Positions 37,548 to 60,274 are shown, numbered from the whole stretch's first letter. The stretch: DNA of 63,118 nt, filler included, from Octopus bimaculoides (GCF_001194135.2; 4 parts of 4 records of this genome joined end to end with filler, not necessarily neighbours in it), one strand, 5' to 3'. Made by a program: numbers and translations. The notes: generated from the sequence alone by a model not told the origin.

Positions 37548-37776
37548 CTGTACATGTTTGTGTATGAAGCTTGTCTTGGATTTTCTTTAATTCGTTGAAG
37601 TTTCCTACAGTTGAAACCATATCAGGGGTAGAGGCGATAGAATTCAGTTCGTTACGATTAATGCCTTTACCAATCCCAATGGCAAATACTTGTATGTTTG
37701 TTCCGTGGATAAGGTTCGCCTCACGTTTTGTAAATGCTCTATTACTTGATTGTCCGTCTGTTAGCACAACAACAAC
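37548..37776 (-). CDS. Exon 7: VWA domain 2, C-terminal part (VVVVLTDGQSS...KLHTQTCT)
   Basis: 229 nt, same length as exon 3; acceptor gaattgttag, donor G|GTAATA (phase 1). Confidence 0.94.
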
Positions 37777-39367
37777 CTAACAATTCAAAAGGTAAACCAT
37801 TGATATTCCAGCTTCAACTTTAGGGCTATTTTACCATTAATATTCAAATTCAAAACTTAACTCAATAATATTTGAGCTTCTAACTTTAGGGTTATTGGTT
37901 TCATCTCTTTGTACCTTTGTTCTCGTAAATCGCTGTTTCTTCTAATTTGTTTTAGTAATTTGGTTGAGATAGATTTGCTTCTTTGTGTTCTAGTTATCCT
38001 GAACATGACGTGAAGCCATGAAATTGATACGAAGGAGAATTTGCTTCTAAAGTACGAGGTATTTTTAATCTTACAAACAATTCTTTCAGATTTAGAGACA
38101 TTTAGATCTGCCTACATTTTTATAAGAAAAGCCATTAGCAATTCAGTGTTTTAAATATATTTTCTCCCCTTGTTTTGTTTTACTAACTGGCGCCATTGAC
38201 GCTTAATAACAGATGCGAGAAGAAACAAGTGTTGAAACCAGGCCGCTATTTTCACCAATTATTTCACTTCTAGTGTGTAATGTCAAGAATAGTATGATGA
38301 TAAGCGCTACTCAAATACCAAAATAAACCATAGATAGTTTAAAAGTAAATGTCGTCGATAAATCTGTGAATTAACTACAGTGTCAAATATTTCTTTTTTC
38401 GGTTCAAACATTTAAAGATGGAGAAGTGATTACATAAAACAAAGATTACCACACGCTTGGAAATATATGTACATGGAATGAACACAATCTGCTAGAAAGA
38501 ACCGATGAGTTCTCTCTACCGTCTTAGAAATACAAATAATTAGATAATCATACAGTTTAGAATTTTTTTAATGTCTGAAAATAAGAGAAAGAGTCATGGC
38601 TGTCATGCCTTATATCTACAAGATTAAAGGTTATCTGCGCCTAAACAACACTAACAACAACATTTTTGTATAGCGTGTTTTACCACTTCTACGCTTTGCA
38701 GTTATGATATTAATGTTCCTATGAGTACTATCCACCAGTTAAACAATTCAGGCAATTCACTAATGAAGACTAGAGATGGCCCTCTAATGTATATTTCAGG
38801 AACTATCTTATCAGGAAGACTAGTTAACGGATTTTTCTTGGTTCTTACTTTCTTAAAGGCATTTGGTACTTCTTCACTTATACAAAAAAGAAATAACGTG
38901 ATTGATCAAACTCATAAAACCAGAGCTTAACCCGTTTTCCTTGACGTGTAAGTGAACGCATTTACAAATGAGTGGACTGAAGCTAAGTAAAATAAATTGT
39001 TCTGATCAAGAAGATTTCCTGTCAGGAAATCGCTATTTAACGATCGTAAGTGCAATTTCCTAACCTCTTGGCCACGCGCTTAGGAGTTAAAGCGCCAAGG
39101 ACAATAAAAACAGCATAGTAAGATAATTATTCTAAGCACTATTGTGGTCAGTATGTATTCAAAGTGTAATTACATAATATTGGAGAGCAACTTTGAAAGT
39201 TTATTTTTCAAACAATTCAAAACAACAGAATATTTCTAATGCTATAAAAGGGAAACTCGACTTTGAAACAGCATGGGACATTAGGTTTCCACATTAAGGC
39301 AAGATATACGACAAAATGATAAATAACAATTGAAAATATAAAAATGAGAATAAGTCAAATTTCTTAC

Positions 39368-39708
39368 CTGCGTGACATTTTTACGCCCACCGTTTTGTGG
39401 AGAGAAACCTGAAGTTCTGGCAAACGCCAAAACTTTGTCAGTTGAAGTTCCTCCGCCATGATAACGGATATTATTAATTGCATTTTTAAGAGCTTGTTTG
39501 TTATATATTTGGTTAAGTTTAATTTTTGGCATCACAACGTTATCAAACGTCGTAACTCCAACTTGAACTCGTTTAGGACCAATTTCAAAGCTATCTACGA
39601 AACTGCTCACAAATCGAAGAGTTGTCTTGAAATTGGCTGCACCGACACTTCCGGATGAATCCACCAAGAAAAGTATATCAAGAGGATTGTCTTTACAGTC
39701 TTGGATAA
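39368..39708 (-). CDS. Exon 6: VWA domain 2, N-terminal part (IQDCKDNPLDILFLVDSSGSVG...GGGTSTD...NVTQ)
   Basis: 341 nt, same length as exon 2; acceptor tcttttgtgtag, donor CAG|GTAAGA. Confidence 0.95.
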
Positions 39709-40393
39709 CTACACAAAAGAATGAAAGTGTTAAATTTAGTATGTATGTATGTATGTATGTATGTATGTATCTATCTATCTATCTATATATCTATCTATGT
39801 ACGTATCTGTCTGGCTATCTGTAAGTGTAAGATGTTTATAAGTGATATCACGAAAGAACAAAATAAGTGCACCCGATACTTATAGAAGAGTAAAAAAATA
39901 TAATGTTTCCATAATTCCGAGATAACTTAGACATGCTTTGGCCTTTATTGACCCAGGAAATGTCACACTTAAGAGCACTACCTGAAGTTGTCTTTTAAGT
40001 CATGTTTTAAGACATCACAACACAGCCCATGCAAATAGACAGATTTTTGCAGAGATATATCCGAGTATTGATAGTTTGTCTAGTATTTCTTGGAGCAATT
40101 TACCTAGATACCATTTGAATGTCATGGTATCTTTTTCTTCTATGAATTCTTTCGGAATAATGCTTTGTTAGGTAATAAAAAGCATACAAGCGATAGAATT
40201 GTTCGATTATTTTACTGGTATTTAACTTTTTCAGTACTAAAAGTCGGAGTTAAAGTGAACACCCGAGGTTCTTAACAGATAATGTAAGAAAAGTAAAATA
40301 AAATTACTATATTGTTTGGAATTTAGCCTTAAGTTCTTCAATTACCTATCAATTTGCCTACACATCATGGTTATATAATATGTGCTTACTTAC

Positions 40394-40420
40394 CTGGCGG
40401 CGTTGTTGTTGGGGGCATGG
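40394..40420 (-). CDS. Exon 5: 27-nt microexon, Pro/Thr hinge (TMPPTTTPP)
   Basis: Acceptor tatattgcag, consensus donor CAG|GTAAGT; phase 1-1 and frame-preserving. GC-rich within an AT-rich intron. Confidence 0.78.
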
Positions 40421-40984
40421 CTGCAATATAAAATTTCATATAATTAATAAGTTGTATCGTATGATGACAATCGATCTTTCGATCGAACTGTATAAATTAA
40501 ATTTCTATTATTTTTTTATGTGTTTTTTTTTCTATTACTGATAGTATCTGTCTGTCAGTTCTTCTGATAGAAGTGATGCTGTATATTTCCTTTCCTATTT
40601 TATTTTTCGGCGACAGGAGATGCAATTTAACCAAAAAATTCAGTCTCTGAATTAATACCACGAGATACCTTGACCGGCTGTCATACAATTCTGTTAATCC
40701 TCTACTCTTCCATTGGTACTTTATATATCGGACTCGAAAGAAATGAAAGACAAGGTTTACCTCAAATGACTTTGAACTCAAAACTCACCGTCTCAGAACT
40801 GATAACACAAGACTGACATTTACAATTTCACCAATTCATCATCCTCGATTATTTCTATAAATATCAGGCCCGAAAGGAATGAAGAATAAAGTTCACCTCG
40901 GTGAGATACGAACTCAGAGCAAAGGCCACAAATCATTCAATCTGATGCTCTAACGACCCTGCTAATTCAAAAACATAAAATAAG

Positions 40985-41215
40985 GCCCATAAGGCTACCG
41001 TCACGGATTCCATGACATATATATTCCCTCCTGAACAGAACACCGGTTCGTCGCACGATTGCTCATTTTTGCCAGTTGAGTGCATAGTAGCAATATGAAA
41101 CTAGGCGTTTCATTTAAGAATACAATGCATCGCCCGACCCAGGAACCGAAACCTCTGTCTCGCCATCATGTGTACAGCTCCTTAATCATTAAGCCACGTG
41201 CCTCCATTCTTCGCC
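40985..41215 (-). mobile_element. Degenerate tRNA-derived SINE
   Basis: Minus-strand head GGAGGCACGTGGCTTAATG...GGTTTCGGTTCC with A/B-box-like motifs. Confidence 0.55.
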
Positions 41216-42872
41216 AATTAGTTATAAAAGATGTCATCAGCATAAAATTACCTAGAATTCGAAAGAATCTAAATATGAGACTTGACCTACTAGAAAGAGT
41301 AGTTAAATCACCCTAACATCACAACTCTGTCAACTAAAAACAATTGATTTTATAATAGATAGTTTAGCACAAGACATCTCTACTGCGACTGGTATGATTT
41401 TGATCATAATGCTTGCAGAATGCAGAATGGACTGGTGTTAAATAGCAACAACAAAAACTAAGGGTTTTTTTTTCCCCAAGATATCTTTGGTCAATAAGGA
41501 TTTCTTACATAACCACAAAACCATCGATTCCATTACATCCTTTATGTGTATTTCAGTAACGGCAAACTAACATGTAAGTCTCAATGTGATACCCTGACTA
41601 GCTAAAATTAGCTGCCAAAATTCCATAAAATCGCACGTTATCTTTCTAAAAGGCGAAGATATTTGGGATGATGCATTCTTTGATGCATTCTGCCTCATAA
41701 ACGAACGAGGTTTTCTTAATGAGTACTGATACTCATTTGTATGAGGTGATAGAATAATTCTCTTTCCTTCTTTGTGTAACACGATAAAATAATAGTATCA
41801 TTTATTTCTCTTACCCATTAGAGTAATAGTAATGTTTCACTAATTTGTATGAATCTGCAAGATAGTAATGTTTCATATTTCTATGACGCAATTAGATGAA
41901 AGTATTATTTGATCGTTTATATGATGCTTAAAAATAGTATTGTCACTCGAATATTTGTAAAACGCTGTATTCATTTCACATTTTGGTACAAGACCAGTAA
42001 TTTCGAGCGACGGGATAAGGCGATTACATCGATCCCCGGGCTCAACTGATAATCATTTTATCGATCTTGAAATGATTAAATGCAAGTCTCCTAGGCGGAA
42101 TTTGAACACAGAACATAAAGACGGACCAAATGCTGCTAACCCTTTTGAGCAGCGTGTTAATGATTCTGCCAGCATACCGCCTTTATATAGGATAATAATA
42201 TTGGTTTCAAATTTTGGTACAAGGCCAACAATTTCAGGGGAGAGATAAGTGGATGACATCGAGCCCAGTGCTTTACAGGTACTTATTTTATCAAACTCCA
42301 AAGGGATGAAAAGCAAAGTCGACCTCGGCATAATTTGAACTCGAAACGTAATGCCATTAAGCAATTTACCCAGCGTGCTAACGATTCTGGCAGTTCACAG
42401 CCTTGTATTTGATTGGTAATTTGTAAGACGCTATAAATTAAAGGATTGTTTGCTCATTTGTTTGACAATAAACAAGAAAGATATTGTTTGCTCATTTGTA
42501 CGATGCTATAGCATAATACTGTTGTTTGATCATATGTATGAGGCTAAAGTTAATGTTATTGCTTGATAAATTATATAACGCTATAAGATAATAATATTAT
42601 TTACTCATAGCGCTGTAATATAATAGTATTTACTCATTTGTGTGATGATAAAAGACAATAACAGTTTTTGTTCTGGGAAGAAATTACAAAGCGAAGCAAA
42701 AGTAATCACGGCAAGATATTAAAAGTCGGTCATAATTAATGCCATACCTATTTGATTTCAAATACTTAATTTACAAAGTTTGTTCTTGGTATAATTATTA
42801 ACTCTAGATTTCATGTAAACGATAAAAGCAAAAGTGAAAGAATAGTATTATTTCCAATAAACGTTTCCTTAC

Positions 42873-43022
42873 TTGGACAGGGCTGTGTGTTACACGTTTT
42901 GTTTTCTCCTGTATTGGCGTAACACTTCGCGAGAAGACATTTTCGGGTACGTTTTGAAACACCTGTTCCGCAAGAAACTGTACAGGGAGACCAAGCACCC
43001 CAGTTATCATATTGACGTTTAG
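42873..43022 (-). CDS. Exon 4: thrombospondin type-1 repeat (AKRQYDNWGAWSPCTVSCGTGVSKRTRKCLLAKCYANTGENKTCNTQPCP)
   Basis: 150 nt, phase 1-1; acceptor ttctgttctatttag, donor A|GTAAGG. WxxW, CxxSCG, RxRxC and six Cys. Not in the ORF track. Confidence 0.93.
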
Positions 43023-43242
43023 CTAAATAGAACAGAAGAAATCAACAGACATTAGAACATATGGCCAAAGTGCAGTGTAGTTCTTTTTCTATTATAAACG
43101 AAAGATATACATAGAGAGTGAGCGAATGAATGAGAAACAGAAATCATTTAAAATACCTTCATTGATTTAATTGTAAATGCTTTTTATTGCAGTATCATTG
43201 AGGATTTTGGTGATACACACACATACATATACACACACATAT

Positions 43243-43304
<62 letters not shown>

Positions 43305-43350
43305 NNNNNNNNNNNNNNNNNNNNNNNNNNNNNNNNNNNNNNNNNNNNNN

Positions 43351-43389
<39 letters not shown>

Positions 43390-43809
43390 GCGCGCGTGCA
43401 TGTGTGTGTTATAGCGTAAATTTGTCCTAAGCATCTCGTCTCACTTCGAGAAGAGATAATGTAAAATTAAGACAATATTGCATGCTAGTGAAATATCTTA
43501 AAACTCCACAACTTTCCCAGTTTGATGGATTGCATAATTATAAGAGCGTAGTTACGATTAGTTGAACCGAATTAAGTTATGTGAAGGCCTTAACCTCGAG
43601 CAGAGCAATTAGACAAACCCGATAGAGAGACATAGTCGTACAGGGTGTATTGTTTTACCCAGAAACACTACTGTAATGGCAATCACAACGTGTCCAGCGT
43701 ATTTGATCCCCGAACGGGTTAAGGAATTAATAAATATTCACTGAGTGGTAAGGAAAACGTGAGGTCAATTACAAGAAAGACTCTTATTTTGAAATTAGCT
43801 TCAATTTAC

Positions 43810-44038
43810 CTGTGCAAGTTTGTGTATGCAACTTGTCTTGGATTTTCTTTAGCTCGTTGAAGTTTCCGACGGTTGAAACCATATCTGGTGCAGAAGCTAT
43901 AGCTTTCAGTTCGGTCTGGTCAACACCACTGCCAATTCCAATTGAAAATACTTGTATGTTTGTTTGATGTATCAGGTCCGCCTCACGTTTTGTCCATGCC
44001 TTGTTACCTGATCTTCCGTCTGTAACAACAACAACAAC
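43810..44038 (-). CDS. Exon 3: VWA domain 1, C-terminal part (VVVVVTDGRSG...KLHTQTCT)
   Basis: 229 nt; acceptor ttttcag, donor G|GTAAAT. Contains the TDG MIDAS Asp, IGIG motif and closing Cys. Confidence 0.95.
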
Positions 44039-45040
44039 CTGAAAATTCAAAATATGGAAATTGGTAAATATATTTGTTATACACGTTGAATATTTAACAG
44101 TCTACACATTGATACGTTGTATAATACCGGTTTCAAACCCTGGCACAAGACCAACAATTTTGGAGGAGGGCGTAGGACGATCACATCGACCCCAGTGCTC
44201 CTATGGTACTTGTTTTATGTACTCCGAAAGGACAAAAGGCAAAGTCGACCTCGGCAGAATTTGAACTCAAAACGTAAAGATAGACGAAAAATCGCTCAGC
44301 AGTTTGCCTGGCACGGTAACGGTTCCGTCAGCTCGCATTCTTATATGTTGTATAATATTATAGAACAACAGAGTAAATGTATTGCATTTTAGACATAAGG
44401 GATTCAACTGACATAAATGTATCATGTGACATTTTCCATTATGACAGGACAGATGATGTGGGGTTGAATCAGCAGAATTTCAACTCACAAAGTAAAATAA
44501 CAAGAATTAATTTACAGCAATGCTATTGTCCAGAGATCTATTCTATCGCTCATCTATGTGACCTCTTTCAACAGAAAAGCTGCTGAGGCCAATTTATCTT
44601 AAGCCTCTAAATGCGTACAGTAGTTCAGATTGATAAATTATTTCATGCTTCCTAAACGCAACCTCGTACTAGTATCGCTGCAAGTCATGATAAATAGATT
44701 CACTGTTTTGATATTAACTTATGAATTCAATAAATCCCTGACGGCACACACCAAAAGAATAAGCAAAAACAATACGGAAGTCTAACTGTTAACCTATATA
44801 GTAATAATAATAATAATAATAATGATAATAATGATAATAATAACCCTTTCTCTTATAGGCACAAAGCCTGAAATTTTGGAGGAAGGGTTTAGTCGATTAC
44901 ATCGATTCCAGTGTTTTACTGGTACTTAATGTATCAATCCCGAAAGGATGAAAAGCAAAGACGACTCCGACGAACTTTGCACTAAGAACGTAAAGACGGC
45001 ATGCCTGGCATGCTAACGATTCTGTCGGCTCGCTGCCTTC

Positions 45041-45093
<53 letters not shown>

Positions 45094-45769
45094 TTCTTTT
45101 AGTAGCCACCAGGGCAAAGGATGAGGGGCACAATACTAAAACAAACATAAAGTGTGGGGGTTTACATATGTTGGAATGAGAAAAAAATATATATATATAT
45201 ATAATGTATGTATATATANNNNNNNNNNNNNNNNNNNNNNNNNNNNNNNNNNNNNNNNNNNNNNNNNNNNNNNNNNNNNNNNNNNNNNNNNNNNNNNNNN
45301 NNNNNNNNNNNNNNNNNNNNNNNNNNNNNNNNNNNNNNNNNNNNNNNNNNNNNNNNNNNNNNNNNNNNNNNNNNNNNNNNNNNNNNNNNNNNNNNNNNNN
45401 NNNNNNNNNNNNNNNNNNNNNNNNNNNNNNNNNNNNNNNNNNNNNNNNNNNNNNNNNNNNNNNNNNNNNNNNNNNNNNNNNNNNNNNNNNNNNNNNNNNN
45501 NNNNNNNNNNNNNNNNNNNNNNNNNNNNNNNNNNNNNNNNNNNNNNNNNNNNNNNNNNNNNNNNNNNNNNNNNNNNNNNNNNNNNNNNNNNNNNNNNNNN
45601 NNNNNNNNNNNNNNNNNNNNNNNNNNNNNNNNNNNNNNNNNNNNNNNNNNNNNNNNNNNNNNNNNNNNNNNNNNNNNNNNNNNNNNNNNNNNNNNNNNNN
45701 NNNNNNNNNNNNNNNNNNNNNNNNNNNNNNNNNNNNNNNNNNNNNNNNNNNNNNNNNNATAAATTCACT

Positions 45770-47965
45770 CGAGGACAGCACCTCACTTTCCTTTTCAAGT
45801 GAACCTTACAAAATTCCATGTGAGCTTTACTAAAGAAGAATGTCTCTGTCCTCATTCCTTTCAGCCTCGTCCACCTGACAACCTCTTTCATCACAGCCAC
45901 CAGACAAAGGAAAACTGTCCTGCCTACCCGATTACAGGAGGGCGGCGGAGAAATCATCATTATGGATTCGGCTGACATAAAGATCCGCCCCACATGCGAC
46001 GACAGCTGCTCGATGTAACTCCACAAGTCAGCAATTCCCGGGCACTGAACGAGTGCATGCAGAAAGGTTTTGTCGCTCTGCGAGTACCTCGGGCAAACCC
46101 GTCTGATAGCACATCCATGTTTGTAGAGTTTATCTCGAACCGGCAGCATAGCGCCCCCCGGTAGGACTTCCAGGTCAAAGACATCTGAAAATTATCTATA
46201 GTAGTCCCCGACCGGAAATTCCTCCAGAATAGACTTGCTAACTAGTTCTCCCTCTAATCTATTTCTTTCCATTGCTAAATCTTTACTAAACGCTATCTAT
46301 TCTACTCCAATTGCTCTCTTCAGAGCGATCCACCGTTGGTTGTTGACAACAGGACCCGTTAACTGCCGCTAATCCGGTCACTCTAGTCTTTGCGAGCCGG
46401 TAAGGACGCGCTCATCTTCCAGTAAAGGGTTCCCTGTCTACTGGTCCTACCTAAATTTTCTGAGCATATCACAAATTTCCAATTTGTGTAGCCAACCAAT
46501 TTAAATTCTGCACAATTTATGCTATCCCTATTCTCTGACCTAACAAATACTCTATCTATATATGATCTGGATGACCTGCTGTAGTTGCTCCATGTCTACA
46601 CTAGCACATCAGGGAATTCCGGAAAGTTGGAAAGTCCTGAACAAGTTTTTAAATTTTTACACCCACTCCTACTATGTACTAAACCCACACAGTCCTTCCG
46701 TGCATCCAAAATACTATTCCAGTCCCCCACTATTACTAATATGTGAGACGTTCCAAACAATGTTTCTAGACACCTGAAGAAATCTGTCCTTCCAACCCCT
46801 GTAGGGACATAAACCACAACCAGTCTAAAGGCACCACTTTCACTGCCATTCACGTCGAGGACCACCACCCTACCATCCGGGTTCATGAAGATAGCCCGTA
46901 CTTGGAGATCTAAGGATTTCCGGAGTAGCACTACTTCACCGCCACTCGCTCCCGATAGGCCACAAGATGTGAACACCTCGAAAATAACTCGTAGTCCTCG
47001 AAAATGGATGCTAGAGCGTGTTTACCGGAGATCCTTGTTTCACTAATGGCACCCACATCCAAATTAAGCGACTTGAGATCATTGAGCAATTGACTTTGCT
47101 TCAAAGCTGTTCTTGTTGTTTTTGTTGGAGTCGTTGAGTTGTGTTGCAGTCGTGGTTTCAGTTTTTGTTGGTTTCTTGGAGTAGGGCTATGTACTCTCCT
47201 CCTCTTTCGGTTACCCACATTTGACACTGTGATCCTTGATCTTTCAGATCTTCTTTCTCCATGTCCTTACAGTTGATGTTGATTTGGAAGCAGACCATTC
47301 AGGAGAAACTTGCTTTTCCTTCTTTGTGTTGGTTTGGCAGCGGGTGTGAACGTAGGTGTGGAAGTCATTGTAGGAGTCTTGAGTGCGTGTTTATGATTTT
47401 GAGCTTGTAGTGTTTGTAATGTTGGCAGCAGTGGAACTTTATTTTTCCTTGTTTCAGGGCAGAAAGCCTTCAAGTGATTTTGTGGCATCTTGGCTTTCTA
47501 CCCTCCATGAACACTGACAGGTGAGTACCGTCCGGGAAATAGATTAGGTCGGACCGCTGGTCGATATGGTCCTGCATGCATTGCAAGGTCAGTTCCATAC
47601 CTATACCTAACCTGTTTTGCTTAGATAGTTTCTTGACCTCCAATATTGTGAATTCGTATTCTAAACATGCCAAGACGGCCGCCACTAACCAGGTATTCGC
47701 TATTTCTGGCGGCATATTCACCACCTTAATCTTGGCAAGTCGTTGGCCGCGATAGCTTGGGATTAAGAAAAAGTTGTCATTCCTCTAAGTGGTCGCGGAA
47801 TTACATCTAGCTTCTTCTGTCCCAAACCTCATCTCAATAGTTCCAAACTTCTTTCATCGGGTGATGTGGGTCTCTTTTTGTATTTCGCTCTCAGAAGCAT
47901 TTTCCACGCGTCGAGATTTGACAAAGAGCGCGTTCCTTTGTCGAACTGGCTTCTTTATCAGCCAT
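45770..47965 (-). mobile_element. Tx1/L1-type LINE: ORF1 + APE + C-terminal CCHC, RT deleted
   Basis: ORF1 (MADKEASS...VFMEGRKPRC), APE (AISETR, GRVVVLDV, VIVGDWN, YIDRVFV, YWKMSASL), then LPVRDKLY..CPR..LHALVQC. The ORF-track entry 46596..46976 is labelled + but reads on the minus strand. Confidence 0.88.
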
Positions 47966-48549
47966 CTTTATCAGCCATCTTTAAATAATTAAAGAAAATT
48001 GCAAAATATTTGCTTTTATTGTAAGTTTTTAAAATTCAAAATTTATTAATGAGTACCCCCAGCATGACAAGCTGTGTTTCTACACAAAAATACTATCTAC
48101 GCAGTCAAGACAATCTCGGAATTGCAATAGTAACAATAAAATGAACACAGGGGTCCTTAGAGTGCCGAAAAGATTACAAACACTGTTTCAACTTACGGAG
48201 CGCCAAATTTCCGTAACTTTATAGTATTGTGGCCANNNNNNNNNNNNNNNNNNNNNNNNNNNNNNNNNNNNNNNNNNNNNNNNNNNNNNNNNNNNNNNNN
48301 NNNNNNNNNNNNNNNNNNNNNNNNNNNNNNNNNNNNNNNNNNNNNNNNNNNNNNNNNNNNNNNNNNNNNNNNNNNNNNNNNNNNNNNNNNNNNNNNNNNN
48401 NNNNNNNNNNNNNNNNNNNNNNNNNNNNNNNNNNNNNNNNNNNNNNNNNNNNNNNNNNNNNNNNNNNNNNNNNNNNNNNNNNNNNNNNNNNNNNNNNNNN
48501 NNNNNNNNNNNNNNNNNNNNNNNNNNNNNNNNNNNNNNNNNNNNNNNNN

Positions 48550-48814
48550 ATTCCTATTATAGTAGGTGCCTTAGGTATAATAAAAAAATATTCAGACAAA
48601 TACATAACAAAAACACCAGGACTTACAAATATATATAACATACAGAAAATTGCACTACTGGGCGCAGCACACATCCTACGCAAAACACTTTCAATACAGT
48701 AACCATAAGAGCACCACAGCAAACCACAGCACATACCCAAGGCGCACAGAGCTGCGCTCGGTAGTGAAGTGAAAGCACGTTATAAAAATAAAACTACTGA
48801 ACAATAATAATAAT
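48550..48814 (+). mobile_element. R4/Dong-type LINE 3' end with (AAT)n tail
   Basis: IPIIVGALG...IQKIALLGAAHILRKTLSIQ* plus 3' UTR. Confidence 0.82.
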
Positions 48815-49393: not shown

Positions 49394-49459
<66 letters not shown>

Positions 49460-49790: not shown

Positions 49791-49829
49791 ATACGTATTT
49801 TCTTCCCCGTCTTTAATGACAATGTCTGG

Positions 49830-50215: not shown

Positions 50216-50726
50216 GTTGTTGCTTGTTAATTGCACACATGAGTGCAATTATTTATCGTCTCGTCGCTTAAAAACTCATTTGTTTATAAGGGTTAATTTA
50301 GCCTAAACTCTGAATTCACAAGAAACGCAGCTGCAAGCTGCCCGAGATAGTATGCGCAGATATAGAGCATGGATCAGAGAGGAACAGCGAGAAAATATAA
50401 TAAAAAGAGGAAAAAGACAGTACCGATAGAGACGTGAGGAAATAAATGTAGACGAACATAAAGAATATATAAAGAATGCTAAATTATGAATGCTATAAAA
50501 ATTCCAATCATCATTTCTTTCTTAAATAGGTCCTCATAGTTTTTTTCCCATTCCGTGGAACCTCGGGTCCCACTAGTTAAGTTTATAATATTAATAAGAT
50601 AACCTCAAGCCAAGAAGTGATAAAAGCCAAAATCAATTTCGGTGACGATAAATACAGAACCAAATAGTGAACCAAACATAGAAGCACATATTTTACCGAA
50701 CACATACAAAACTAAAGACTGTATAG

Positions 50727-51246
50727 CAGTGCTCACCAACTGTTTTTACACCACGGACCGGCTCCATGCCGGGTAATAATTCCGCAGACCGGTAGTATCA
50801 CATATGTGTAATTTAAGTGCATTTCGATAAAGAGAGCAATAATAAAAAGAACAATTTATTAATGGAAAGAAAAAGTGTATAATCTCTTTACTCTCATGTA
50901 CCGAAATTCTTTAAAATCTGAAAATTAGTTGGGATTAAAAAACTAGTTGAAAATTATTACAAAAAAATTTTAATATACATTGATTGTAAAATGTACTTAC
51001 AGTTATGATAGATAGTAAAGGTAGGCGTAAAATATACATTAATTATATAAATATACAAAATATTCATAAAATGTACTTACAGTCATGATAGATAGTATTG
51101 AGTTGGTGAATGTTGATTATTTAAACAAATCTTTTTAAATTTAGGTCTTATGTAATTTTAGACAAGTTAATTATTTTTCTGCGACCCAGTAGCAAGTGAT
51201 CAACGGAACAGGTAACGGTCCGTGGCCCAGTGGTTGAGGACCTCTG
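50727..51246. mobile_element. hAT (Charlie-like) MITE
   Basis: TIRs CAGTGCTCACCAAC / CAGAGGTCCTCAAC (rc); 8-bp TSD CTGTATAG / CTGTAAAG; no coding capacity. Confidence 0.82.
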
Positions 51247-51360
51247 CTGTAAAGTATTTAGACCTATTAAAATTTCTAATTAAATATGAGTGATTTTATC
51301 GATTCGATTAATTTAATATGAATAAAAATGTTTGAATTATAAAACAGTTAAAATCCATAC

Positions 51361-51701
51361 CTGCGTGACATTTGTACGTCCACCGTTTTGTGGAGTGAAA
51401 GCTTGAACTCTGGCAAACGCCAAGGCTCTATCAGTTGAAGTCATACCGCCACTATGTGGGATACCATTAATAGCGGTTTTAAGAGCTTGTTTGTTGTATA
51501 TTTGGTTAAGTTTGATTTTTGGTAGCACCCTGTGATCAAACGTTGTTACAGCAACTTGAACTTTTTTAGGACCAATATCAAAGCTATCTACAAAACTGGT
51601 CACAAATTTAAGAACTGTCTTGAAATTGGCAGCACCGACACTTCCGGATGAATCCACCAAGAAAAGTATATCGAGAGGATTGTCTTTACAATCCATATTA
51701 T
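51361..51701 (-). CDS. Exon 2: VWA domain 1, N-terminal part (NMDCKDNPLDILFLVDSSGSVG...GGMTSTD...NVTQ)
   Basis: 341 nt; acceptor ttttgcag, donor CAG|GTATGG. MIDAS DxSxS (DSSGS) and GGxT motifs present. Confidence 0.95.
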
Positions 51702-51790
51702 CTGCAAAAAATAAAAAAATGATTTCAAACATATATCGAAAACTAAGAATATACGTCTGGTTGTATGTGTACATATACACACCCACACAA

Positions 51791-51826
<36 letters not shown>

Positions 51827-52881
51827 NNNNNNNNNNNNNNNNNNNNNNNNNNNNNNNNNNNNNNNNNNNNNNNNNNNNNNNNNNNNNNNNNNNNNNNNNN
51901 NNNNNNNNNNNNNNNNNNNNNNNNNNNNNNNNNNNNNNNNNNNNNNNNNNNNNNNNNNNNNNNNNNNNNNNNNNNNNNNNNNNNNNNNNNNNNNNNNNNN
52001 NNNNNNNNNNNNNNNNNATATTATTATATGATCGAACGCCACGCATCCGTTTTCTAGTAAGTTTTATCGTTATAATTCCCATGCGCACTCTATCCCTCTC
52101 TATTATTTCTATGTATCTCCCTCTCTTGTTCTTATTCCTTCCTGTTTTTCTCTACCACCCTTCCCTATTCTTCTCCTCTCCTCTTCACCGTTCCCTCTCT
52201 CTCTCTCTCACTCGTCTTCCGTGACTCTCTCGTTGTTCACAGGTGACCAACCTCTATCCATCTTCCTTTCTTCCACTTCCTTCCTAAAGACAAGACCTAC
52301 TTTTGCCTGTCTCTTCTCAAAGCTCGTTTTTCCAGCGTTCACTACTTCACATCGTCTTGGCTTAACAGCCCTCACCGTTAGTTTTTACTGTTTTGTTCTC
52401 ACTGTCCTGTTTTTGTTACCACTTTAACCCTCCGCAAAAAATCCTAAATTTTATTTAATTTGCTTTGCGGGAAGGACTGTTTAAACGAAGTCGCGTCTTA
52501 TCTCTACTTTCGAAACGCGGAGCAGATAAAATAGGAGACAACTGATGAAGGGAATGTTGCCTTTCTCGTTTCTGTATTTGTTTCTTTCGTTGTTCGAAAA
52601 AAAGTTTGTTTTCTATGTTTTTGTTGTTTATGTTCTCGTTTCTCATTTTTTTAACGTTTTTTTTTTGATGTCCTGTACCCATGTATGCATGTATATATAC
52701 ATATATATGTAGATGTGTACATATATGTATGTATATATGCATATATTTATATATTATTTATATTATTATATATATTTATATATATAGAGAGGGTGATAAA
52801 TTGAATATTAATTCAGTTTAAAACCAAGTGGCCTAGCATATAAAAAATCTGAAAATTCAGACAAATTGTATTACATGTGTA

Positions 52882-53146
52882 TAAGGGATGACCACTAAGT
52901 GGGCATCCGATATGCTAGAAAGAGGTCATAAGTAAGCAAAACGTTAATGTTCATAAGTAAAACGTTAATCTTCGAAACCGGTACACAATTAATTCTTCAT
53001 TCTGTATATTTCTCATTTTGTCTTGCCCGCGTATGTTCTGGTGTTTTGCGAAATTTTTTTTCTGGAGAACATTATTTTTCTTTGTGGTTGGGTCGTTGAT
53101 GACCTCTTTCTAGCATATCGGATGTCCACTTAGTGGTCATCCCTTA
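52882..53146. repeat. Fold-back with 48-bp inverted arms (1 mismatch), probably a Penelope-like pLTR fragment with an inversion
   Basis: Arms at 52882-52929 and 53099-53146; the spacer contains CTTCGAAACCGGTA. Confidence 0.8.
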
Positions 53147-53188
53147 TTCACATATTTATATATATATGTATATTTATATATATACATT

Positions 53189-53242
<54 letters not shown>

Positions 53243-53314
53243 TAAACACATATACAGGCATACCCATACATACATATATGCAAATAAATATATATTAGTA
53301 TATATGTATTTACG

Positions 53315-53346
<32 letters not shown>

Positions 53347-56300
53347 GATAAACGTTTTTATTTCAGAAAACGAAATCATCGTTTGACCATTCCATAGCTA
53401 AACAGTTGTACTACACTTTGAGAGGTTTTTATCTCTTAGCATCTGAAGGAGCTGGAGATACGATAGTTTGACCAAAAGAACCGGCTATTGCAGACAAAAA
53501 TAATATTGTAGAAAACGCAATTGGCCAAATTTGGACATACGACAGTGTTGCACAATGGAAATGATATATATGTGAATGTGTTACAGACACACATTGATTT
53601 CATCAAGTATATTCTAACCCGTCTTCGTTTCAACAGGCAAAATTTAAGTGATTTGCCATTACATATATCAAATTATTTAGAGCTACGGTTATTGTATATG
53701 CCAGAAAGCGGAAAAGAATCGAGATAACCCTGCGGAAAAGAATCGAGAGAAAGATCTGTCATTTTCGTGAAGGCGAATCTTGCAAGACTGCATTCTGAAC
53801 TCTATATGTAGTCCACTGTGTTGTTGGTTGCTACATTCGTGCAATGCACGAAGTTTTCTTTCAATATTTGCCTTTATAGGAAAAGTTTAACGTTTCCTCA
53901 ATGTCATATAACCTTTGCTCTTCGTTTATTTGCACTATTTTAGCATTGTGGATCTTAATACCATTGGAAAGTTTTGATGCAGCTATCACTTATCTTATTG
54001 TTGTGCTTCTTGAACATTAAGGTGAGCTATAGCGGCACGAAAAACATACCTAGTACTATAAAGAATGGCAAAAGTAAGTTGTTGAAACTAAATGAATACC
54101 CAAGAGAGCAGACATTTTATAGACGACAGACCGAAATTTGTTTGGAGTAGAATAGCGGTTAGCAGAGCATGTAGTTAAAGTTTTTGATGAGAGCAGAGGA
54201 ACTGGAAAACGTTTCTGTGTCTGCAAATGGAAATTAGTTATCTTTTGAAGTTCAAAGTATTTTGAGTTTTGTGATTATTCATTACACTGTCTGCGCTTTA
54301 GTGTCTTTATCTATGTGTCTCTATTGAAGCATTTAGTGTTGTCTATTAATTTTGATCAAACATCAGGTTTCCTGAAAAATCAGTCAATTATCTGTTCATA
54401 ACATAACATATACTTAGATATAGCATACTTCAAAATGACGGGATGGTCACGGCAGTTGATGACCTAGACAGATTAGGACTTAACTACATCCTTATAAATA
54501 TTATGTAAATATTAAGATATGAATCCCAATATTTCCTGCTCTAAAACTATAGATTGTTGGCACCAGTTTTATCAGTTGCAGGCTTTCTCCATATAAAAGG
54601 GTAAGAGCTGAAGACTTTCTTTGGTCACGAATGTCCATGGGATTGCACCTAGAAAGTGACTCTAGAAAGTCCGGACAAGGTTCTTTATAGAAGATTGAGT
54701 CACCATTGCAAACCAGCCTCCCCTCTCCACGCCACCAATCTTGTCCAAGAGAACGACAAAAGCCGATACAGCTTGGCACCAGTGACGTCGCAACTTATTT
54801 CTACAGTTAGGTGAACTGGAGCAACGTGAAATAAAGTGTCTTGCCCAAGAACACAACACACAGCCCGCTCCGGGAATCGAACTCATTATTACATGATTAT
54901 GAGTCTGGCGCTCTAACCAATGAACCATGCGCTTATTTTAGATTTAAATTCTAATATATAACTGCTCCTTTCAAATGAGCAAAAGAAATATCTTTCATTT
55001 TCTGCAGCATACTTATTACAGACTTGGTTATTATAATTGCTTATACCTCTTGGTTATTGCGTTCTGGAAAACCTAAAACTACACATATTTCAATGTTCCT
55101 TTTTCGTTCAGAACAAGGATAAGAAGAAAATGCTCACAATAATCAAGTCCTACTTATCAGATTTACATAAAATTTAAATCTAAAATTGCTCTATGTAAAG
55201 ACTGCAAAAGCTTACGAAAAATATCTAAACAGTATGGCGCTTGTTAATAACTTATTCGGATTTATTTCGTACAGGACACATATGCTATTTATATGTAGTT
55301 TCCAGCACAAAAAGTCGATATCGGGAATATTACTGTAGTAAATAATGAGAATTTCATTTAAAACAAGAAAAATTCACGCATATCTGATAATTATGAAACC
55401 TATGTCGCTGCAACTTGTCCAGTTGGCAGGTACAAAGACAATTTAAGAGAAATCATAATCCGTGCTATTAAAATGATAAGCATATTGCTTCAAATATTTA
55501 TGATATGTAAAACGGAATAATGGACTCTCTAGAAATAGAAGTATGTTCGATTGCATATATTCCTTTCCAAGTTTTAATATTGGTGGTATCAATTCCATCT
55601 TCTGATTCTTTCGGGGACGTTGAAATAAAATTGTTATCAATGCAATATGGCTGATATGAAAGATTATAGCATTATCATAATAAAATCTATTTTTCTCCTT
55701 ATCAAGGATAATGAATTTTTTTTTAAATATGCTAATCTATATAATTGAATTTTCATAATTAGCATATTGTATGTATGTGTTTGTAATGCTCATAAATATT
55801 TGTCACTTTGAAAAGCAAATATTTTTATTCACTATTCATCTTTATGTGATTTCATCTTTCATTTGGAATGGCATTCGAAACATTCGAAAATGAAACGCAA
55901 GCTGAATAATTAAGTAAAATTTGCTTTCTCGAATGACGTATTAATGTGTAGATAATTATCTACAGTTTCCACAGTTTTGCAGGTTTAGTGACGACGTCGG
56001 AAGCACTCACCTATATTGTGTACACTGAAATCTTCCAGTATTAAAATTATATTTTGAAATCTTTTTCATCATCCGGAAACATAATTCATAAATATTTTAT
56101 CGACCTTCTGTTTTTCGTCTTCTTGTTTTATCTAACTCCTTGCAAACTCCTAATGCTCCTCACCGTCGCAGAAGGATGACGGGGTGAGAGACGATTCGTC
56201 CTTTTCCACTGCTGGAACCGAGCTCGAGTCGATTCCGCCCACACACCATTACTGTTGCCTCGATCAGTGGTAGAAGAGCAGACGTTGGAATTGCCCTTGC

Positions 56301-57290
56301 TGATGTTACTGGTTTCGCTGTTGTCTGCTGCTCTCTCTCCATTCCTCGGCTTTTCTAGTTCCTCAGTGTAGAAACCACTTAATTGACTCTCTTTCATAAG
56401 TGTAACAGTTGATCTTTCTGTCCTGTAACATTAGTTTTGTGACTTATTTTCTCAACCCACGACGGAGCACAGTTTCGGAATTGCTCTATAGCTCTCGGAA
56501 ATCATTAAACTTTGCCACTGAACGTCTTTTCTGCTACTTCGTTACTATCTGCATATACCACGCCACAAAATTGACGATATGCTAACAGTTAATGAAGTTA
56601 TCCCTTGTGTTACACCCCTCCATATATTGCGGTGCAGTCAGATGTGCAACGTACCAACTCGGTTTGTTTCATTTTTCACCTCGTCCCCCGTTTTGAATAT
56701 TATTTATGTAATTCCATAGTAACTCCCTCGACCGACGAACAATGTTACACCACATATCGGTTGAAGACAACTAAAATTTTCTTTCGGGGAAAAAAGAAAA
56801 CATCCTTATGCTTATCGAGAAGCAAAGAGGTTTTTTTTTCTCTATTTGATAAATGATTATGGTTTTGATGCCCTTTACCTTCTTACATAGCTCTATCAGG
56901 TAATTATTTTCTCTAAAAGGTAATTCATTTTTATGGCATATCTGTTGGAACTAATGCAACAGTAGAAGACAGGAGATGCTTTTCCTGTCTCGATTAGATC
57001 TTTACATTCATTCATTTGCTTGACGAATGCATGCTCATGTGTGTTATTGCTACGTAGATATTTTTTTCTTTTCATTATTTGTATGGTTGTCTGTCAGAAA
57101 TACCTTATTTTTCTTGAGAAATAAACATGTTCTAGTAGGGAACTGACTTTATTTTCACTGTTTATTCTAATGTCTGTAAAAATGCATTTCTTTTAGTTCT
57201 TATGTTGGGGCATCTTTTTTATACAGTTTTTTTTTTTTTGCTTTGCTTTGTTTATTTGCTTATGAGTGATAGAGAAGAAANNNNNNNNNN

Positions 57291-57572
57291 CTAAAGCTCC
57301 ACGAAGCTTTGTCAGGGTATGGTGGCGAACCCTGCTGTGCTCTTTCACCACAACTTTCTCTCACTCTTACTTCCTGTTTCTGTTGTGCCTGTAATTCAAA
57401 GGGTCAGCTTTGTTACACTGTGTCACGCTGAATATCACCAAGAATTTCGTTAAGGGTACACGTGTCTGTGGAGTGCTCAGCCACTTGCACGTTAATTTCA
57501 TGAGCAGGCTGTTCCGTTGATCGGATCAACTGGAACCCTCGACGTCGTAAGCGACGGAGTGCCAACAACAAG
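57291..57572 (+). mobile_element. SINE family B copy (head hidden in gap) with TSD GATAGAGAAGAAA
   Basis: Near-identical to the 14430 copy body; the 13-nt duplication is seen before the gap and after the tail. Confidence 0.85.
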
Positions 57573-59651
57573 ATAGAGAAGAAAACTTTTCTTCGCAGTC
57601 ACATTTTTGTCATCCCAAACAGTGAAGAAATGATGCAAACAATTCAATTCCTATATTTCTATTTGGAGCGAAATGAGTTCCACAGAGTTTCGCCTGGTAA
57701 TCATCACGGATATGGGTGAGCAAGATGTAACACGTCCGAGTATCTCAAAACACAGTAACTACAATAACAACGACAAAAACAACAACAACAACGATAATAT
57801 TCCTTTCTACTACAGGCACATGGCCTGAATTTTGTAGGGAGGAAATTAGTCGATTACTTCGACTCCAGTACTTGACTGGTACTTATTTTATTGACGCCGA
57901 AAGGATGAAAGGATGACCTCACCGAACTTTAATCTCAGAACGAAAAGACAGGTGAAATGCCGCTAATTAGCGTGATTAGCGATTCTGCCAGCTCGTCACC
58001 TTCATAATGATAATGATGGTTAGTCGCGTCGATTTTGACATATAAATGTTCGAAGGAAAATATATTTAAAAAATGATCAAAAATTGAAGCTGCATCTATT
58101 TGTGTTGGATACGTGAATGTAATTTGAGACCAAGTATGGATCTGAGACAGATGTATCTATCGATTGCAGGATATAATTATTTCGTTGTTCTGTTTCTTCC
58201 ACTCAAATTATTTAGATGCACCATGACACTTTTTACACCAATTAGATCGATCTAGGCAATAACTTGCCCAAGATGTAAGAATTTTAATTATTTGATTCAA
58301 CTTATTGTTATACCATAAAGGAGAATTTTCGAACTACAGTCATGCATTCGAAAATGTACTGCCTACGTACATTCACTTCTCAACAGCATATTTTTGATAC
58401 TGGAAATGTCACATTTTTCTAAAATTTTGATATTTCATATCTTATCTTGCCGTTTTATATTGCAGGTATTGCGCAGAGAGTACATAAAACATCAACAACA
58501 ACAACAATAATAATCCTTTCTACTGAAGGCGCAAGGCTTTAAAAGTTTGGGGGGAGGGGAATAGTCTATTATATCGACCCCAGTATTTCACTGGTATTTT
58601 CTTTATCGATCCCGAAACGATGAAAAGCAAAGTCGACCTCGGCGGAATTTTATAATAATGAGAAGAAGAAGAAGAAGAAGAAGAAGAAGAAGAAGAAGAA
58701 GAAGAATGTTTTCAAATTTTGGGCACAGGGCCTGTGATTTCAGGAGAGAGTGCTAAGATTACAGGATATAGGTGTTGAGATTACAGAACGTTTGGGCATA
58801 GGCAAAGAGGAATTCATTTTCATGTCCTCCCCTTCGGAGGCGAATAATTTAATAGAAGGACTCTTCTTCACGGGAAAAAAACAGAAACTGCCTCAGAGGT
58901 TATAGATTCCACTTCAGCGAAGCGTACCTCATTATCTCAGGAAATATACACCTGCTCATAGTTTTAATAAATTGATTTTGCATAGAAGTGATCCCATTCG
59001 GCCTTTCTCTGTTCTCTGTCCTCACAAGGGGATGGGGTTATATGACTATGGCCTCTTTTCTGTGTTTTAGGATCTGCTTTGGTCGATTTGAAAATATTTT
59101 TGTGGTTGGTGGTGTCCATGTACCGAAATACACTATCTGACATGAATGTTTTAGCGTTTCAGAAAAATGGAGTTAATGAAAAAATTAAAATTGTTGTTAT
59201 ACACCAGTCTAGGGTAGATTTCTAAATGTTTCCACTTAAAGTTTCTATAAGTAAATAAATAAATAAAAAATGTGATTATCCACGTACATTAAGCTTGCTA
59301 GAATCCAAAGTCTCAGGAAGTTATTTGAAAGCAGTATTTTATACAATTCCCCATCCGACTACTGGAGACTCTACCAGATAGATTCTTTCTTTTCACCCAA
59401 ATTTTGGGCAATGTCTGTCTCCATTAACAAATTTGTTGAATGAAACTAACATTCGTTATAGACTTGGGACATGTTTACAAGAAATAATATCCTCTTAGAA
59501 AATGCGTATACTTTATCTGCCCCAGAAGAAAGAAAAGAAAAGTTGAGTTGTGATGAATTTGAATTTGGTATAAAAGAGCCTTAAATAAACTACGCCCGGT
59601 ATTCAGTCCGCTGTCCTGTTATTTCTACAATTCAATACACACCTAGGTGGC

Positions 59652-59709
<58 letters not shown>

Positions 59710-60174
59710 TATCGTCATTTTTTGGTTCCCTGAGGTAAAAATCTCAGAATGGATACAGCGAAACGACTGTAATTGGAACCGGATTTTCGACTTGCTGCCC
59801 AGTAAATTAAGCGATAATTTTATTGATCGTATCAGATGAGACTTACATTGAAAGAAATCAAATATTTTGTAGACAAAAGCGTATTAAATTCTCATTATAT
59901 CACTTCAAAGAGAATGCTATTAAAGAACACAAAGACGAGAAAAAAACGTCACAACAAACAAAAAGTTAAATAATTATCAAGATGTAAATTTAAGATTAAT
60001 TAGGAAGTGTTTATCAGGGTCAAAATATATAAATACAATGGTCGAAGCCTAAAGGAAAATAATTAGATCGAGTATACATCTTGGCAAAGAAGTATGTTCT
60101 TCGTGTTTTATATTAAAATAATTATATATTATAATTGCATTCGTTAAATATATGGTAAATAATTTTTTTCTTAC

Positions 60175-60244
60175 CTGGTTTAGCTGCTAAGCTGCCACCA
60201 CAGAGCAGCAAAACCAACCAGTAGAGGGAATACATCTTTGTCAT
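60175..60244 (-). CDS. Exon 1: signal peptide MTKMYSLYWLVLLLCGGSLAAKP + G (phase 1)
   Basis: Hydrophobic core with a small-residue cleavage site (SLA). Donor AG|GTAAGA at 60175/60174. G+AT joins exon 2 in frame as Asp. Other in-frame ATGs at 60253 and 60235. Confidence 0.8.
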
Positions 60245-60274
60245 TTTTGACATAAGGAATCTATCAAGCCCTGA

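What the first reader, a model, noticed from the sequence alone, without database searches (positions are those of the whole stretch)
37548..60253. Secreted VWA-TSP1-hinge-VWA protein with a TRAP/CTRP-like domain arrangement
Seen: seven exons splice into signal peptide, VWA1, TSP1, TMPPTTTPP hinge and VWA2. Both VWAs keep all MIDAS residues (DSSGS, GGxT, TDG) and are bracketed by a Cys pair. The TSP1 follows VWA1 after only ~6 residues and has WxxW (C-mannosylation) and CxxSCG (O-fucosylation) motifs plus an unusually short CLLAKC loop. Known: an abutting VWA-TSR pair defines apicomplexan TRAP/MIC2/CTRP adhesins, and twin-VWA proteins occur in mussel byssus (PTMP1). Inference: a lineage-specific, metal-dependent adhesive or matrix protein assembled from phase-1 modules by exon shuffling, convergent with TRAP rather than homologous. 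The likely TATA promoter and unmethylated body fit tissue-restricted expression.
Basis: partly seen in the sequence, partly recalled or inferred. Interest (0 to 1): 0.75.

Follow-up and report, generated by a model that had tools for sequence, protein, structure and literature searches.

The report
N-terminal part of octopus VWA–TSR protein
The seven exons are real, but they encode only the first quarter of an already annotated 2002-residue secreted octopus matrix or mucus protein that has relatives across molluscs, so this is an ordinary though uncharacterised extracellular adhesion gene.

Summary
All seven minus-strand exons exist with canonical AG/GT sites and compatible phases. They splice into signal peptide, VWA1, TSR, PT hinge and VWA2 (465 aa). 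Every assembly gap lies in an intron. However, the model has no stop codon: exon 7 ends at a phase-1 donor 414 nt from the edge of the piece.

The 465 aa are identical to residues 1-465 of RefSeq XP_052823619.1 (Octopus bimaculoides LOC106875429). That protein is 2002 aa and its gene spans about 165 kb. It continues with a second TSR and PT hinge, three more VWA domains, ShK-like motifs and VWC-like Cys-rich repeats. It has no transmembrane segment and no collagen helix.

An abalone protein is collinear with residues 270-1986, so octopus has tandemly duplicated the N-terminal VWA-TSR-PT cassette (76% aa identity between copies, dN/dS 0.30). VWA-TSR-PT cassettes also occur in Mya, Dreissena, Elysia, Lingula and a sponge.

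The O. sinensis/vulgaris orthologue of this N-terminal region was detected in an octopus skin-mucus proteome (2 peptides).

Most likely function: a secreted, MIDAS-metal-dependent cross-linking matrix or mucus glycoprotein (inferred).

The parts
60275..60282 (-). TATAAAAG motif 29 nt upstream of the first ATG; a possible core promoter
   Evidence: Read directly. Not tested. A start site about 30 nt downstream would fall at the first ATG. The orthologues start at the equivalent of Met4.
60175..60253 (-). Coding exon 1: Met plus signal peptide (MSKMTKMYSLYWLVLLLCGGSLAAKP), ending in phase 1
   Evidence: It is the most hydrophobic 19-residue window of the whole 2002-aa protein. Identical to the start of XP_052823619.1.
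51361..51701 (-). Exon 2: N-terminal half of VWA1 (DSSGS, GGMT), phase 1 to 0
   Evidence: An orthologous exon with conserved AG/GT occurs in a related octopod contig, L002 (86% nt identity, dN/dS 0.41).
43810..44038 (-). Exon 3: C-terminal half of VWA1 (VVTDG ... TQTC), phase 0 to 1
42873..43022 (-). Exon 4: TSR 1 (WGAWSPCTVSCGTG ... CLLAKC ... QPCP), symmetric phase 1-1
   Evidence: Pfam TSP_1 scores 33.7 bits against a gathering score of 21.6.
40394..40420 (-). Exon 5: 27-nt Pro/Thr hinge (MPPTTTPP), phase 1-1
   Evidence: PT linkers sit at the same place in the Mya, Dreissena and Haliotis relatives.
39368..39708 (-). Exon 6: N-terminal half of VWA2, a paralogue of exon 2 (84% nt identity)
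   Evidence: An orthologous exon occurs in the related octopod contig L001 (92% nt identity, dN/dS 0.22).
37548..37776 (-). Exon 7: C-terminal half of VWA2, a paralogue of exon 3 (80% nt identity). It ends at a phase-1 GT donor with no stop codon
   Evidence: In XP_052823619.1 the next residues are AKRQFGDWTPWSPCSASCNTG, which is TSR 2.
37134..37547 (-). Start of intron 7, cut by the edge of the piece. The remaining 1537 codons lie outside the window
   Evidence: gene range about 165 kb in GCA_001194135.2. Reading through gives GNIEVILVHQQFFY*. No AATAAA is visible in the printed sequence; this was judged by eye only, with no pattern search.

Best explanation
The finding is the 5' end of Octopus bimaculoides gene LOC106875429: its first seven coding exons, encoding residues 1-465 of 2002.

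The full product is a secreted, non-membrane, non-collagenous modular glycoprotein. Its layout is signal peptide, [VWA-TSR-PT hinge] x2, VWA x3, an ShK-like motif, a series of VWC-like Cys-rich repeats, and further ShK-like motifs.

The two N-terminal cassettes arose by tandem duplication of one ancestral VWA-TSR-PT cassette. This happened after the cephalopod-gastropod split and before the O. bimaculoides/O. vulgaris split. Both copies are under purifying selection.

Inferred mechanism. Five MIDAS-competent VWA domains give multivalent, divalent-cation-dependent binding to matrix partners, as in mussel PTMP1, the collagen VI N-domains and integrin I domains. The TSRs (probably C-mannosylated and O-fucosylated) and the O-glycosylated PT hinges act as spacers and secondary binding sites. 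The Cys-rich C-terminus mediates further binding or oligomerisation. Together these would cross-link skin, connective-tissue or mucus matrix.

Shown here: the gene structure, identity to the annotated protein, the domain content, the duplication, the selection and the presence of relatives. Inferred: ligand binding, metal dependence, glycosylation and the tissue role.
For: - Exon structure and phases.
- The spliced model is identical to residues 1-465 of P0297 (XP_052823619.1) and of P0300. Full sequence.
- The gene range is 165 kb on a 147.8-Mb chromosome of GCA_001194135.2.
- Pfam on P0297 finds 5 VWA, 2 TSP_1 and ShK.
- Motif scan of P0297 finds 5 DxSxS motifs, 5 ShK-like motifs and VWC-like repeats. 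There is no (GXY)5 run and no hydrophobic segment apart from the signal peptide.
- Orthologues: O. vulgaris 90.6% identical over the full length; the O. sinensis model 91% identical from residue 442. Haliotis XP_071091672.1 is collinear, with residues 270-1986 matching its 21-1864 at 37.7%.
- The two cassettes are 76% identical to each other, and 46% and 44% identical to the single Haliotis cassette.
- dN/dS is 0.30 between the VWA copies, and 0.22 and 0.41 against a related octopod, with splice sites conserved.
- Closest solved structures: PTMP1 and the collagen VI alpha3 N-domains by sequence. By fold, VWA1 has pLDDT above 90 and matches collagen VI N5 at TM 0.91 and rmsd 1.3 A, and PTMP1 at E 2e-24.
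- 3xVWA paralogues rank 19th and 30th in the same proteome.
Against: - No transcript data were examined directly. Identity to a RefSeq model is not independent proof of every junction.
- Proteomic support is only 2 peptides, in a sister species, and in a mucus sample that also contains muscle and blood proteins.
- No ligand, metal-dependence or glycosylation data exist for this protein or for any close relative. No paper mentions the locus.
- The function of the C-terminal Cys-rich repeats is unknown. Pfam VWC does not reach E 0.001 on the octopus protein.
Confidence: 0.82

Rival explanations
1. One reading: a stand-alone secreted protein of about 465 aa, VWA-TSR-hinge-VWA, acting as a TRAP-like adhesin. 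This could be either the whole gene or a short isoform that ends after exon 6 or 7.
For: O. sinensis RefSeq carries a 438-aa model (XP_036358533.1) that covers exactly this region, and that entry is the one found in the mucus proteome. Reading through the exon 7 donor reaches a stop after 14 codons.
Against: - Exon 7 ends at a good donor, at the same position and phase as the exon 3 donor, with no stop codon.
- Both O. bimaculoides RefSeq models and the O. vulgaris model continue into TSR 2.
- The tail of the O. sinensis short model maps to intron 6 (window 38043-37925) and is frame-broken in O. bimaculoides. It would also truncate VWA2.
- The second O. sinensis model starts at residue 442, which points to a split annotation.
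Confidence: 0.07
2. The protein is mainly an extracellular regulator of BMP/TGF-beta-type ligands, like CRIM1 or kielin/chordin, acting through its VWC-like repeats. On this view the VWA-TSR cassettes only anchor it to the matrix.
For: The C-terminal half carries repeated C-x-Y-x-G ... W-x-D-G-C units. Older O. bimaculoides fragments of this locus's cluster were named 'cysteine-rich motor neuron 1 protein' and 'VWFC domain-containing'. The Lingula relative hits Pfam VWC (31.8 bits against a cut-off of 27.6).
Against: Pfam VWC does not reach E 0.001 on the octopus or Haliotis proteins. Five MIDAS-bearing VWAs and the detection in mucus point to a structural or adhesive role. No ligand data exist.
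Confidence: 0.12
3. The VWA-TSR pair is homologous as a unit to the pair in TRAP/MIC2/CTRP, through shared descent or an ancient animal-to-apicomplexan transfer of a two-domain cassette, rather than being convergent.
For: MIC2 (E 1e-23) and TRAP (E 3e-16) align to the query across VWA and TSR in one HMMER stretch with similar spacing. They are the best two-domain fold matches after PTMP1. Dreissena XP_052223521.1 adds a TM segment and a tail to three such cassettes.
Against: - The MIC2 VWA alone scores the same as integrin and collagen VI VWAs (66 against 65-66 bits).
- The two-domain superposition is poor: rmsd 13-17 A, TMt 0.58-0.67, TSR pLDDT 55-82.
- VWA and TSR are both phase 1-1 shuffling modules, and they are combined in many orders in animals.
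Confidence: 0.05
4. It is a membrane-anchored cell-adhesion receptor, like the Dreissena (VWA-TSR-PT)x3-TM protein.
For: The cassette is 41-43% identical to each of the three Dreissena cassettes.
Against: The 2002-aa protein has no hydrophobic segment beyond the signal peptide. Its best 19-residue Kyte-Doolittle window is 1.3, against 2.7 for the Dreissena TM segment.
Confidence: 0.02

Closest known systems
Haliotis 'uncharacterized protein' XP_071091672.1 / XP_048254904.1 (2067 aa) and the octopus orthologues (O. vulgaris CAI9721274.1, O. sinensis XP_036358133.1 + XP_036358533.1)
   Same: Collinear layout of VWA-TSR-PT, three VWAs, ShK-like motifs and Cys-rich repeats. Identity to Haliotis is 37.7% over 1864 columns; identity within Octopus is about 90%.
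   Different: Octopus has a second, tandemly duplicated N-terminal VWA-TSR-PT cassette and a shortened TSR loop (CLLAKC/CLLKKC, against 11 residues in Haliotis). None of these proteins is functionally characterised.
Mytilus PTMP1 (PDB 4CN8), a twin-VWA collagen-binding byssal matrix protein
   Same: It is the best per-domain sequence match among solved structures (82 bits per VWA) and the top fold match (E 2e-24). It is a MIDAS-bearing mollusc matrix VWA protein.
   Different: PTMP1 has two directly abutting VWAs, with no TSR, no PT hinge and no Cys-rich C-terminus. It is 454 aa against 2002 aa. Only about 24% identical, and the two-domain superposition has rmsd of about 20 A.
Apicomplexan TRAP / MIC2 / CTRP adhesins (PDB 4HQL, 4OKR)
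   Same: A MIDAS VWA is followed within about 10 residues by a TSR. One alignment spans both domains.
   Different: The octopus protein has no TM segment, no rhomboid site and no cytoplasmic motor-linking tail. It is an intron-containing animal gene with mollusc orthologues. Its VWA is not specifically closer to MIC2. The interdomain geometry is not reproduced.
Collagen VI alpha3 N-terminal VWA array, matrilins and collagen XII (the names used by automatic annotation)
   Same: Tandem VWA domains bracketed by Cys. The VWA1 model superposes on collagen VI alpha3 N5 at TM 0.91 and rmsd 1.3 A.
   Different: No Gly-X-Y helix. No Pfam hit to EGF or Collagen at E 0.001; Pfam does not model matrilin-type coiled coils, so that feature was not tested. 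These families lack interspersed TSRs.
[quoted passage not shown]
   Same: The same VWA-TSR-PT cassette, repeated three times. Each repeat is 41-43% identical to the octopus cassette.
   Different: It ends in a TM helix and a 56-residue cytoplasmic tail, not in VWAs plus Cys-rich repeats.
Pinctada fucata byssal 'TSP-1' protein (24 TSRs + 1 VWA) and Elysia 'VWA+TSP1+VWA collagen alpha-5'
   Same: These are mollusc secreted proteins that combine a MIDAS VWA with TSRs. The Pinctada protein is a foot-expressed byssal component linked to Ca2+ effects (PMC4597212). The same domain order was tabulated in Elysia (PMC7663992).
   Different: Domain numbers and order differ in Pinctada. No sequence comparison with either was made here.

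Membership tests
Pfam VWA (PF00092) and TSP_1 (PF00090) domain families | A profile match above the curated gathering score | tested here: met
   VWA scores 295 bits for two domains against a cut-off of 23.8. TSP_1 scores 33.7 against 21.6. In the full protein there are 5 VWA and 2 TSP_1.
LOC106875429-type lophotrochozoan multi-VWA/TSR/ShK/Cys-repeat proteins | Identity with, or collinear full-length alignment to, the annotated proteins | tested here: met
   The model is identical to residues 1-465 of XP_052823619.1. It is 90.6% identical to the O. vulgaris orthologue and 37.7% identical over 1864 columns to Haliotis.
TRAP/MIC2/CTRP adhesins | A MIDAS VWA domain immediately followed by a TSR | tested here: met
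   The spacer is 8 residues, and MIC2 aligns across both domains.
TRAP/MIC2/CTRP adhesins | A type I transmembrane segment (rhomboid substrate) | tested here: not met
   The 2002-aa protein has no hydrophobic segment other than the signal peptide.
TRAP/MIC2/CTRP adhesins | An acidic cytoplasmic tail with a sub-terminal Trp that links to the glideosome | tested here: not met
   There is no cytoplasmic region. The C-terminus is ...CHYCDRKAPAVMYEATAAHGSE, after an ShK-like motif.
TRAP/MIC2/CTRP adhesins | TRAP-like relative geometry of VWA and TSR (extensible beta-ribbon) | tested here: inconclusive
   An AF2 model of the O. sinensis orthologue fragment has TSR pLDDT 55-82 and pTM 0.51. Its superposition on 4HQO/4OKR gives rmsd 13-17 A and TMt 0.58-0.67.
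Collagen VI / XII | A Gly-X-Y triple-helical domain | tested here: not met
   No run of five or more G-x-x, and no Pfam Collagen hit.
Matrilins (cartilage matrix protein) | EGF domain(s) between the VWAs and a C-terminal coiled coil | tested here: not met
   No Pfam EGF hit at E 0.001. TSR or PT linkers lie between the VWAs instead. The coiled coil was not separately predicted.
PTMP1-like twin-VWA byssal matrix proteins | Two directly adjoining MIDAS VWAs that bind collagen | not testable with these tools
   Sequence and fold similarity are the highest among solved structures. However, a TSR plus hinge intervenes, and collagen binding needs an experiment.

The most novel reading that the evidence does not exclude
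The VWA-TSR-PT cassette is an old, mobile metazoan adhesion unit. It is seen here in octopus, abalone, clams, a brachiopod and a calcareous sponge, and in zebra mussel as three cassettes on a transmembrane stalk. On this reading, the apicomplexan TRAP/MIC2/CTRP ectodomain descends from such an animal cassette by lateral transfer as a two-domain unit, rather than by independent assembly.
Probability: 0.06. Interest if true: 0.7.

Novelty: new member of a known kind. Interest (0 to 1): 0.25.

Why it matters
As submitted, the finding would have introduced a "new TRAP-like octopus adhesin". In fact it is the truncated start of an annotated gene.

The corrected picture has modest value:
- It gives a domain-level description of an uncharacterised giant secreted protein family of molluscs.
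- It dates an internal cassette duplication in octopods.
- It links the family to octopus skin mucus through proteomics.
- It shows that VWA-TSR adjacency is widespread in animals, which weakens its use as an apicomplexan hallmark.

The Dreissena transmembrane (VWA-TSR-PT)x3 protein is the more interesting lead for anyone studying the origin of TRAP-type adhesins or byssal and mucus adhesion.

Tried and rejected
1. The search for homologous proteins with the spliced model returned no cephalopod hit (best 37%, Mya). This nearly suggested the gene was unannotated. The octopus proteins surfaced only as members of a 50%-identity cluster.
I used exon 6 alone instead.
3. Exact look-ups of the window's exon 6 and exon 7 ORFs in public contigs found nothing.
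4. Logan contigs of a related octopod (L001-L003) are only about 1 kb and do not reach beyond exon 7.
5. The DNA of the full locus could not be fetched because the gene range is 165 kb. I therefore did not see exon 8 itself.
6. I compared exon structure with Mya arenaria. Only the phase-1 intron two codons after the VWA C-terminal Cys is shared. The intra-VWA phase-0 intron is not, and TSR plus PT form one exon in Mya. Gene structure therefore neither proves nor excludes a common origin of the cassette.
7. Pfam on ten long intronic ORFs found no hits. ARAGORN found no tRNA-like element.
8. A literature search for the locus and accession identifiers found nothing.
9. I considered a pseudogene or a chance ORF and rejected both, on dN/dS, conserved splice sites and proteomics.

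Full report
**Observation**

The piece (37134-60848) is 36% G+C with CpG o/e 0.85. On the minus strand, open stretches carry VWA, TSR and Pro/Thr motifs. I read each boundary directly and assembled the exons.

The seven exons are 60253-60175, 51701-51361, 44038-43810, 43022-42873, 40420-40394, 39708-39368 and 37776-37548. Each has an AG acceptor and a GT donor. The phases chain as 0>1>0>1>1>1>0>1. The 465-aa product reads signal peptide, VWA1, TSR, MPPTTTPP hinge, VWA2.

Pfam confirms two VWA domains (E 2e-88) and one TSP_1 domain above its gathering score (33.7 against 21.6 bits). The bracketing cysteines are invariant or nearly invariant in a 28-sequence alignment.

All five assembly gaps fall in introns 1-3. 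The spliced product equals the RefSeq protein derived from the newer chromosome-level assembly, so no coding exon is hidden in a gap.

Exon 7 ends at cag|gtaata in phase 1, exactly where its paralogue exon 3 ends before the TSR exon. The piece stops 414 nt further on.

**What it is**

The first database search gave only mollusc "cartilage matrix protein-like" and "collagen VI-like" proteins at 37% identity or less. A full HMMER scan with exon 6 found two short genomic ORFs from a related octopod, 79% and 90% identical. It also found several multi-VWA proteins.

Cluster membership of one hit plus a motif scan revealed Octopus proteins carrying the identical WGAWSPCTVSCGTG. XP_052823619.1 is "uncharacterized protein LOC106875429 [Octopus bimaculoides]", 2002 aa. 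Its first 465 residues are identical to my spliced model. Its gene spans about 165 kb on a 147.8-Mb chromosome.

After VWA2 the protein continues with:
- a second TSR (WTPWSPCSASCNTG, also with a short CLLKKC loop);
- a second PT hinge;
- three more MIDAS-bearing VWA domains;
- an ShK-like motif;
- VWC-like Cys-rich repeats;
- four further ShK-like motifs.

It has no transmembrane segment and no Gly-X-Y run. The finding is therefore the N-terminal 23% of a large annotated, but uncharacterised, secreted protein.

**Evolution**

- The O. vulgaris orthologue is 90.6% identical over its full length.
- O. sinensis has the gene split into two models.
- Haliotis XP_071091672.1 aligns collinearly with residues 270-1986 (37.7% over 1864 columns). 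Relative to abalone, octopus therefore has one extra N-terminal VWA-TSR-PT cassette.
- The two octopus cassettes are 76% identical to each other, and 46% and 44% identical to the single Haliotis cassette.
- The corresponding exons are 80-84% identical at the DNA level.
- dN/dS between the VWA copies is 0.30, with dS 0.46.
- Orthologous exons 2 and 6 in a related octopod keep their splice sites, with dN/dS 0.41 and 0.22. Both copies are therefore functional, and the duplication predates that split.
- A tandem octopus paralogue (O. vulgaris CAI9721272.1, 41.6% identical) lacks TSRs.

VWA-TSR-PT cassettes also occur in:
- Mya arenaria;
- Dreissena polymorpha, as three cassettes followed by a TM helix and tail;
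- Elysia crispata;
- Lingula and the sponge Sycon.

"VWA+TSP1+VWA" was already tabulated for Elysia chlorotica (PMC7663992).

Comparison with the Mya gene shows the same phase-1 intron two codons after the VWA C-terminal Cys. The other introns are placed differently.

**Relation to TRAP**

Among solved structures, the best sequence matches are collagen VI alpha3 (many domains), mussel PTMP1 (82 bits per VWA), then MIC2 and TRAP. MIC2 and TRAP align over VWA and TSR in one stretch.

The MIC2 VWA alone scores 66 bits, the same as integrin alpha1 and the collagen VI N-domains. There is therefore no specific affinity.

An AlphaFold2 model of the O. sinensis N-terminal fragment has VWA pLDDT above 90 and TSR pLDDT 55-82. 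Its matches are:
- PTMP1 first;
- then TRAP and MIC2, with a poor two-domain fit (rmsd 13-17 A);
- single VWAs, which superpose at 1.2-2 A.

With no TM segment and no tail, the TRAP family's defining features are not met.

**Function**

No paper mentions the locus. [quoted passage not shown] Two 3xVWA paralogues rank 19th and 30th in that list.

Related mollusc VWA and TSR proteins are byssal matrix components: PTMP1, and the Pinctada TSP-1 protein (PMC4597212; review PMC12817120).

The best-supported reading is a secreted, multivalent, MIDAS-metal-dependent cross-linker of skin, mucus or connective matrix. Ligands, metal dependence and glycosylation are inferred, not shown. A role as a BMP-type ligand regulator through the VWC-like repeats remains possible.

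**Verdict**

Interest is low to modest.

Noticed in passing
window 42228-42335, 44155-44262, 44871-44978, 57828-57935, 58543-58650: A family of about 110-150-nt dispersed direct repeats (61-78% identical) lies in introns 1, 2 and 4. It looks like a SINE-type element. ARAGORN finds no tRNA-like part.
   Followed up: partly
window 43197-43304, 45155-45218, 48172-48235, 51727-51826: Four of the five assembly gaps (43305-43350, 45219-45758, 48236-48549, 51827-52017) are bordered on the low-coordinate side by (TA)n/(CA)n/(ATAC)n microsatellite sequence. The breaks therefore look like simple-repeat collapses rather than missing unique sequence. The flanks of the fifth gap (57281-57290) were not examined.
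   Followed up: partly
window 45963-47784, minus strand (intron 2): A run of long ORFs (93-141 aa) looks like a decayed retroelement insertion. None hits Pfam at E 0.01.
   Followed up: partly
window 60244-60253: The first ATG (60253) lies 29 nt after the start of the TATAAAAG motif. It is not used in the O. vulgaris or O. sinensis models, which begin at the equivalent of Met4 (60244). The real start may be Met4 or Met7.
   Followed up: partly
window 37925-38043, minus strand (intron 6): The 52-residue tail of the O. sinensis short model XP_036358533.1 maps here, but in three different frames in O. bimaculoides. It is probably an annotation artefact of a split gene model, or at most a species-specific alternative 3' exon.
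   Followed up: yes
P0165 (Dreissena polymorpha XP_052223521.1), not in the window: Its layout is signal peptide, (VWA-TSR-PT)x3, a transmembrane helix and a 56-residue tail. This animal protein has the overall CTRP/TRAP layout, including membrane anchorage.
   Followed up: partly
P0234 (Sycon ciliatum XP_065193054.1, named 'hornerin-like'), not in the window: A 4041-aa sponge protein with about 11 VWA and 10 TSR domains in strict alternation. The VWA-TSR unit therefore occurs outside Bilateria.
   Followed up: no
L004 37626-41024 (Mya arenaria CP111027.1): The gene next to the Mya VWA-TSR gene encodes a TSP_1 plus fibrinogen-C protein on the opposite strand.
   Followed up: no
tool behaviour: The word-indexed protein search did not return the window's own annotated protein or its 90%-identical orthologues. 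They were found only through cluster membership, so an absence of hits there should not be read as 'unannotated'.
   Followed up: yes
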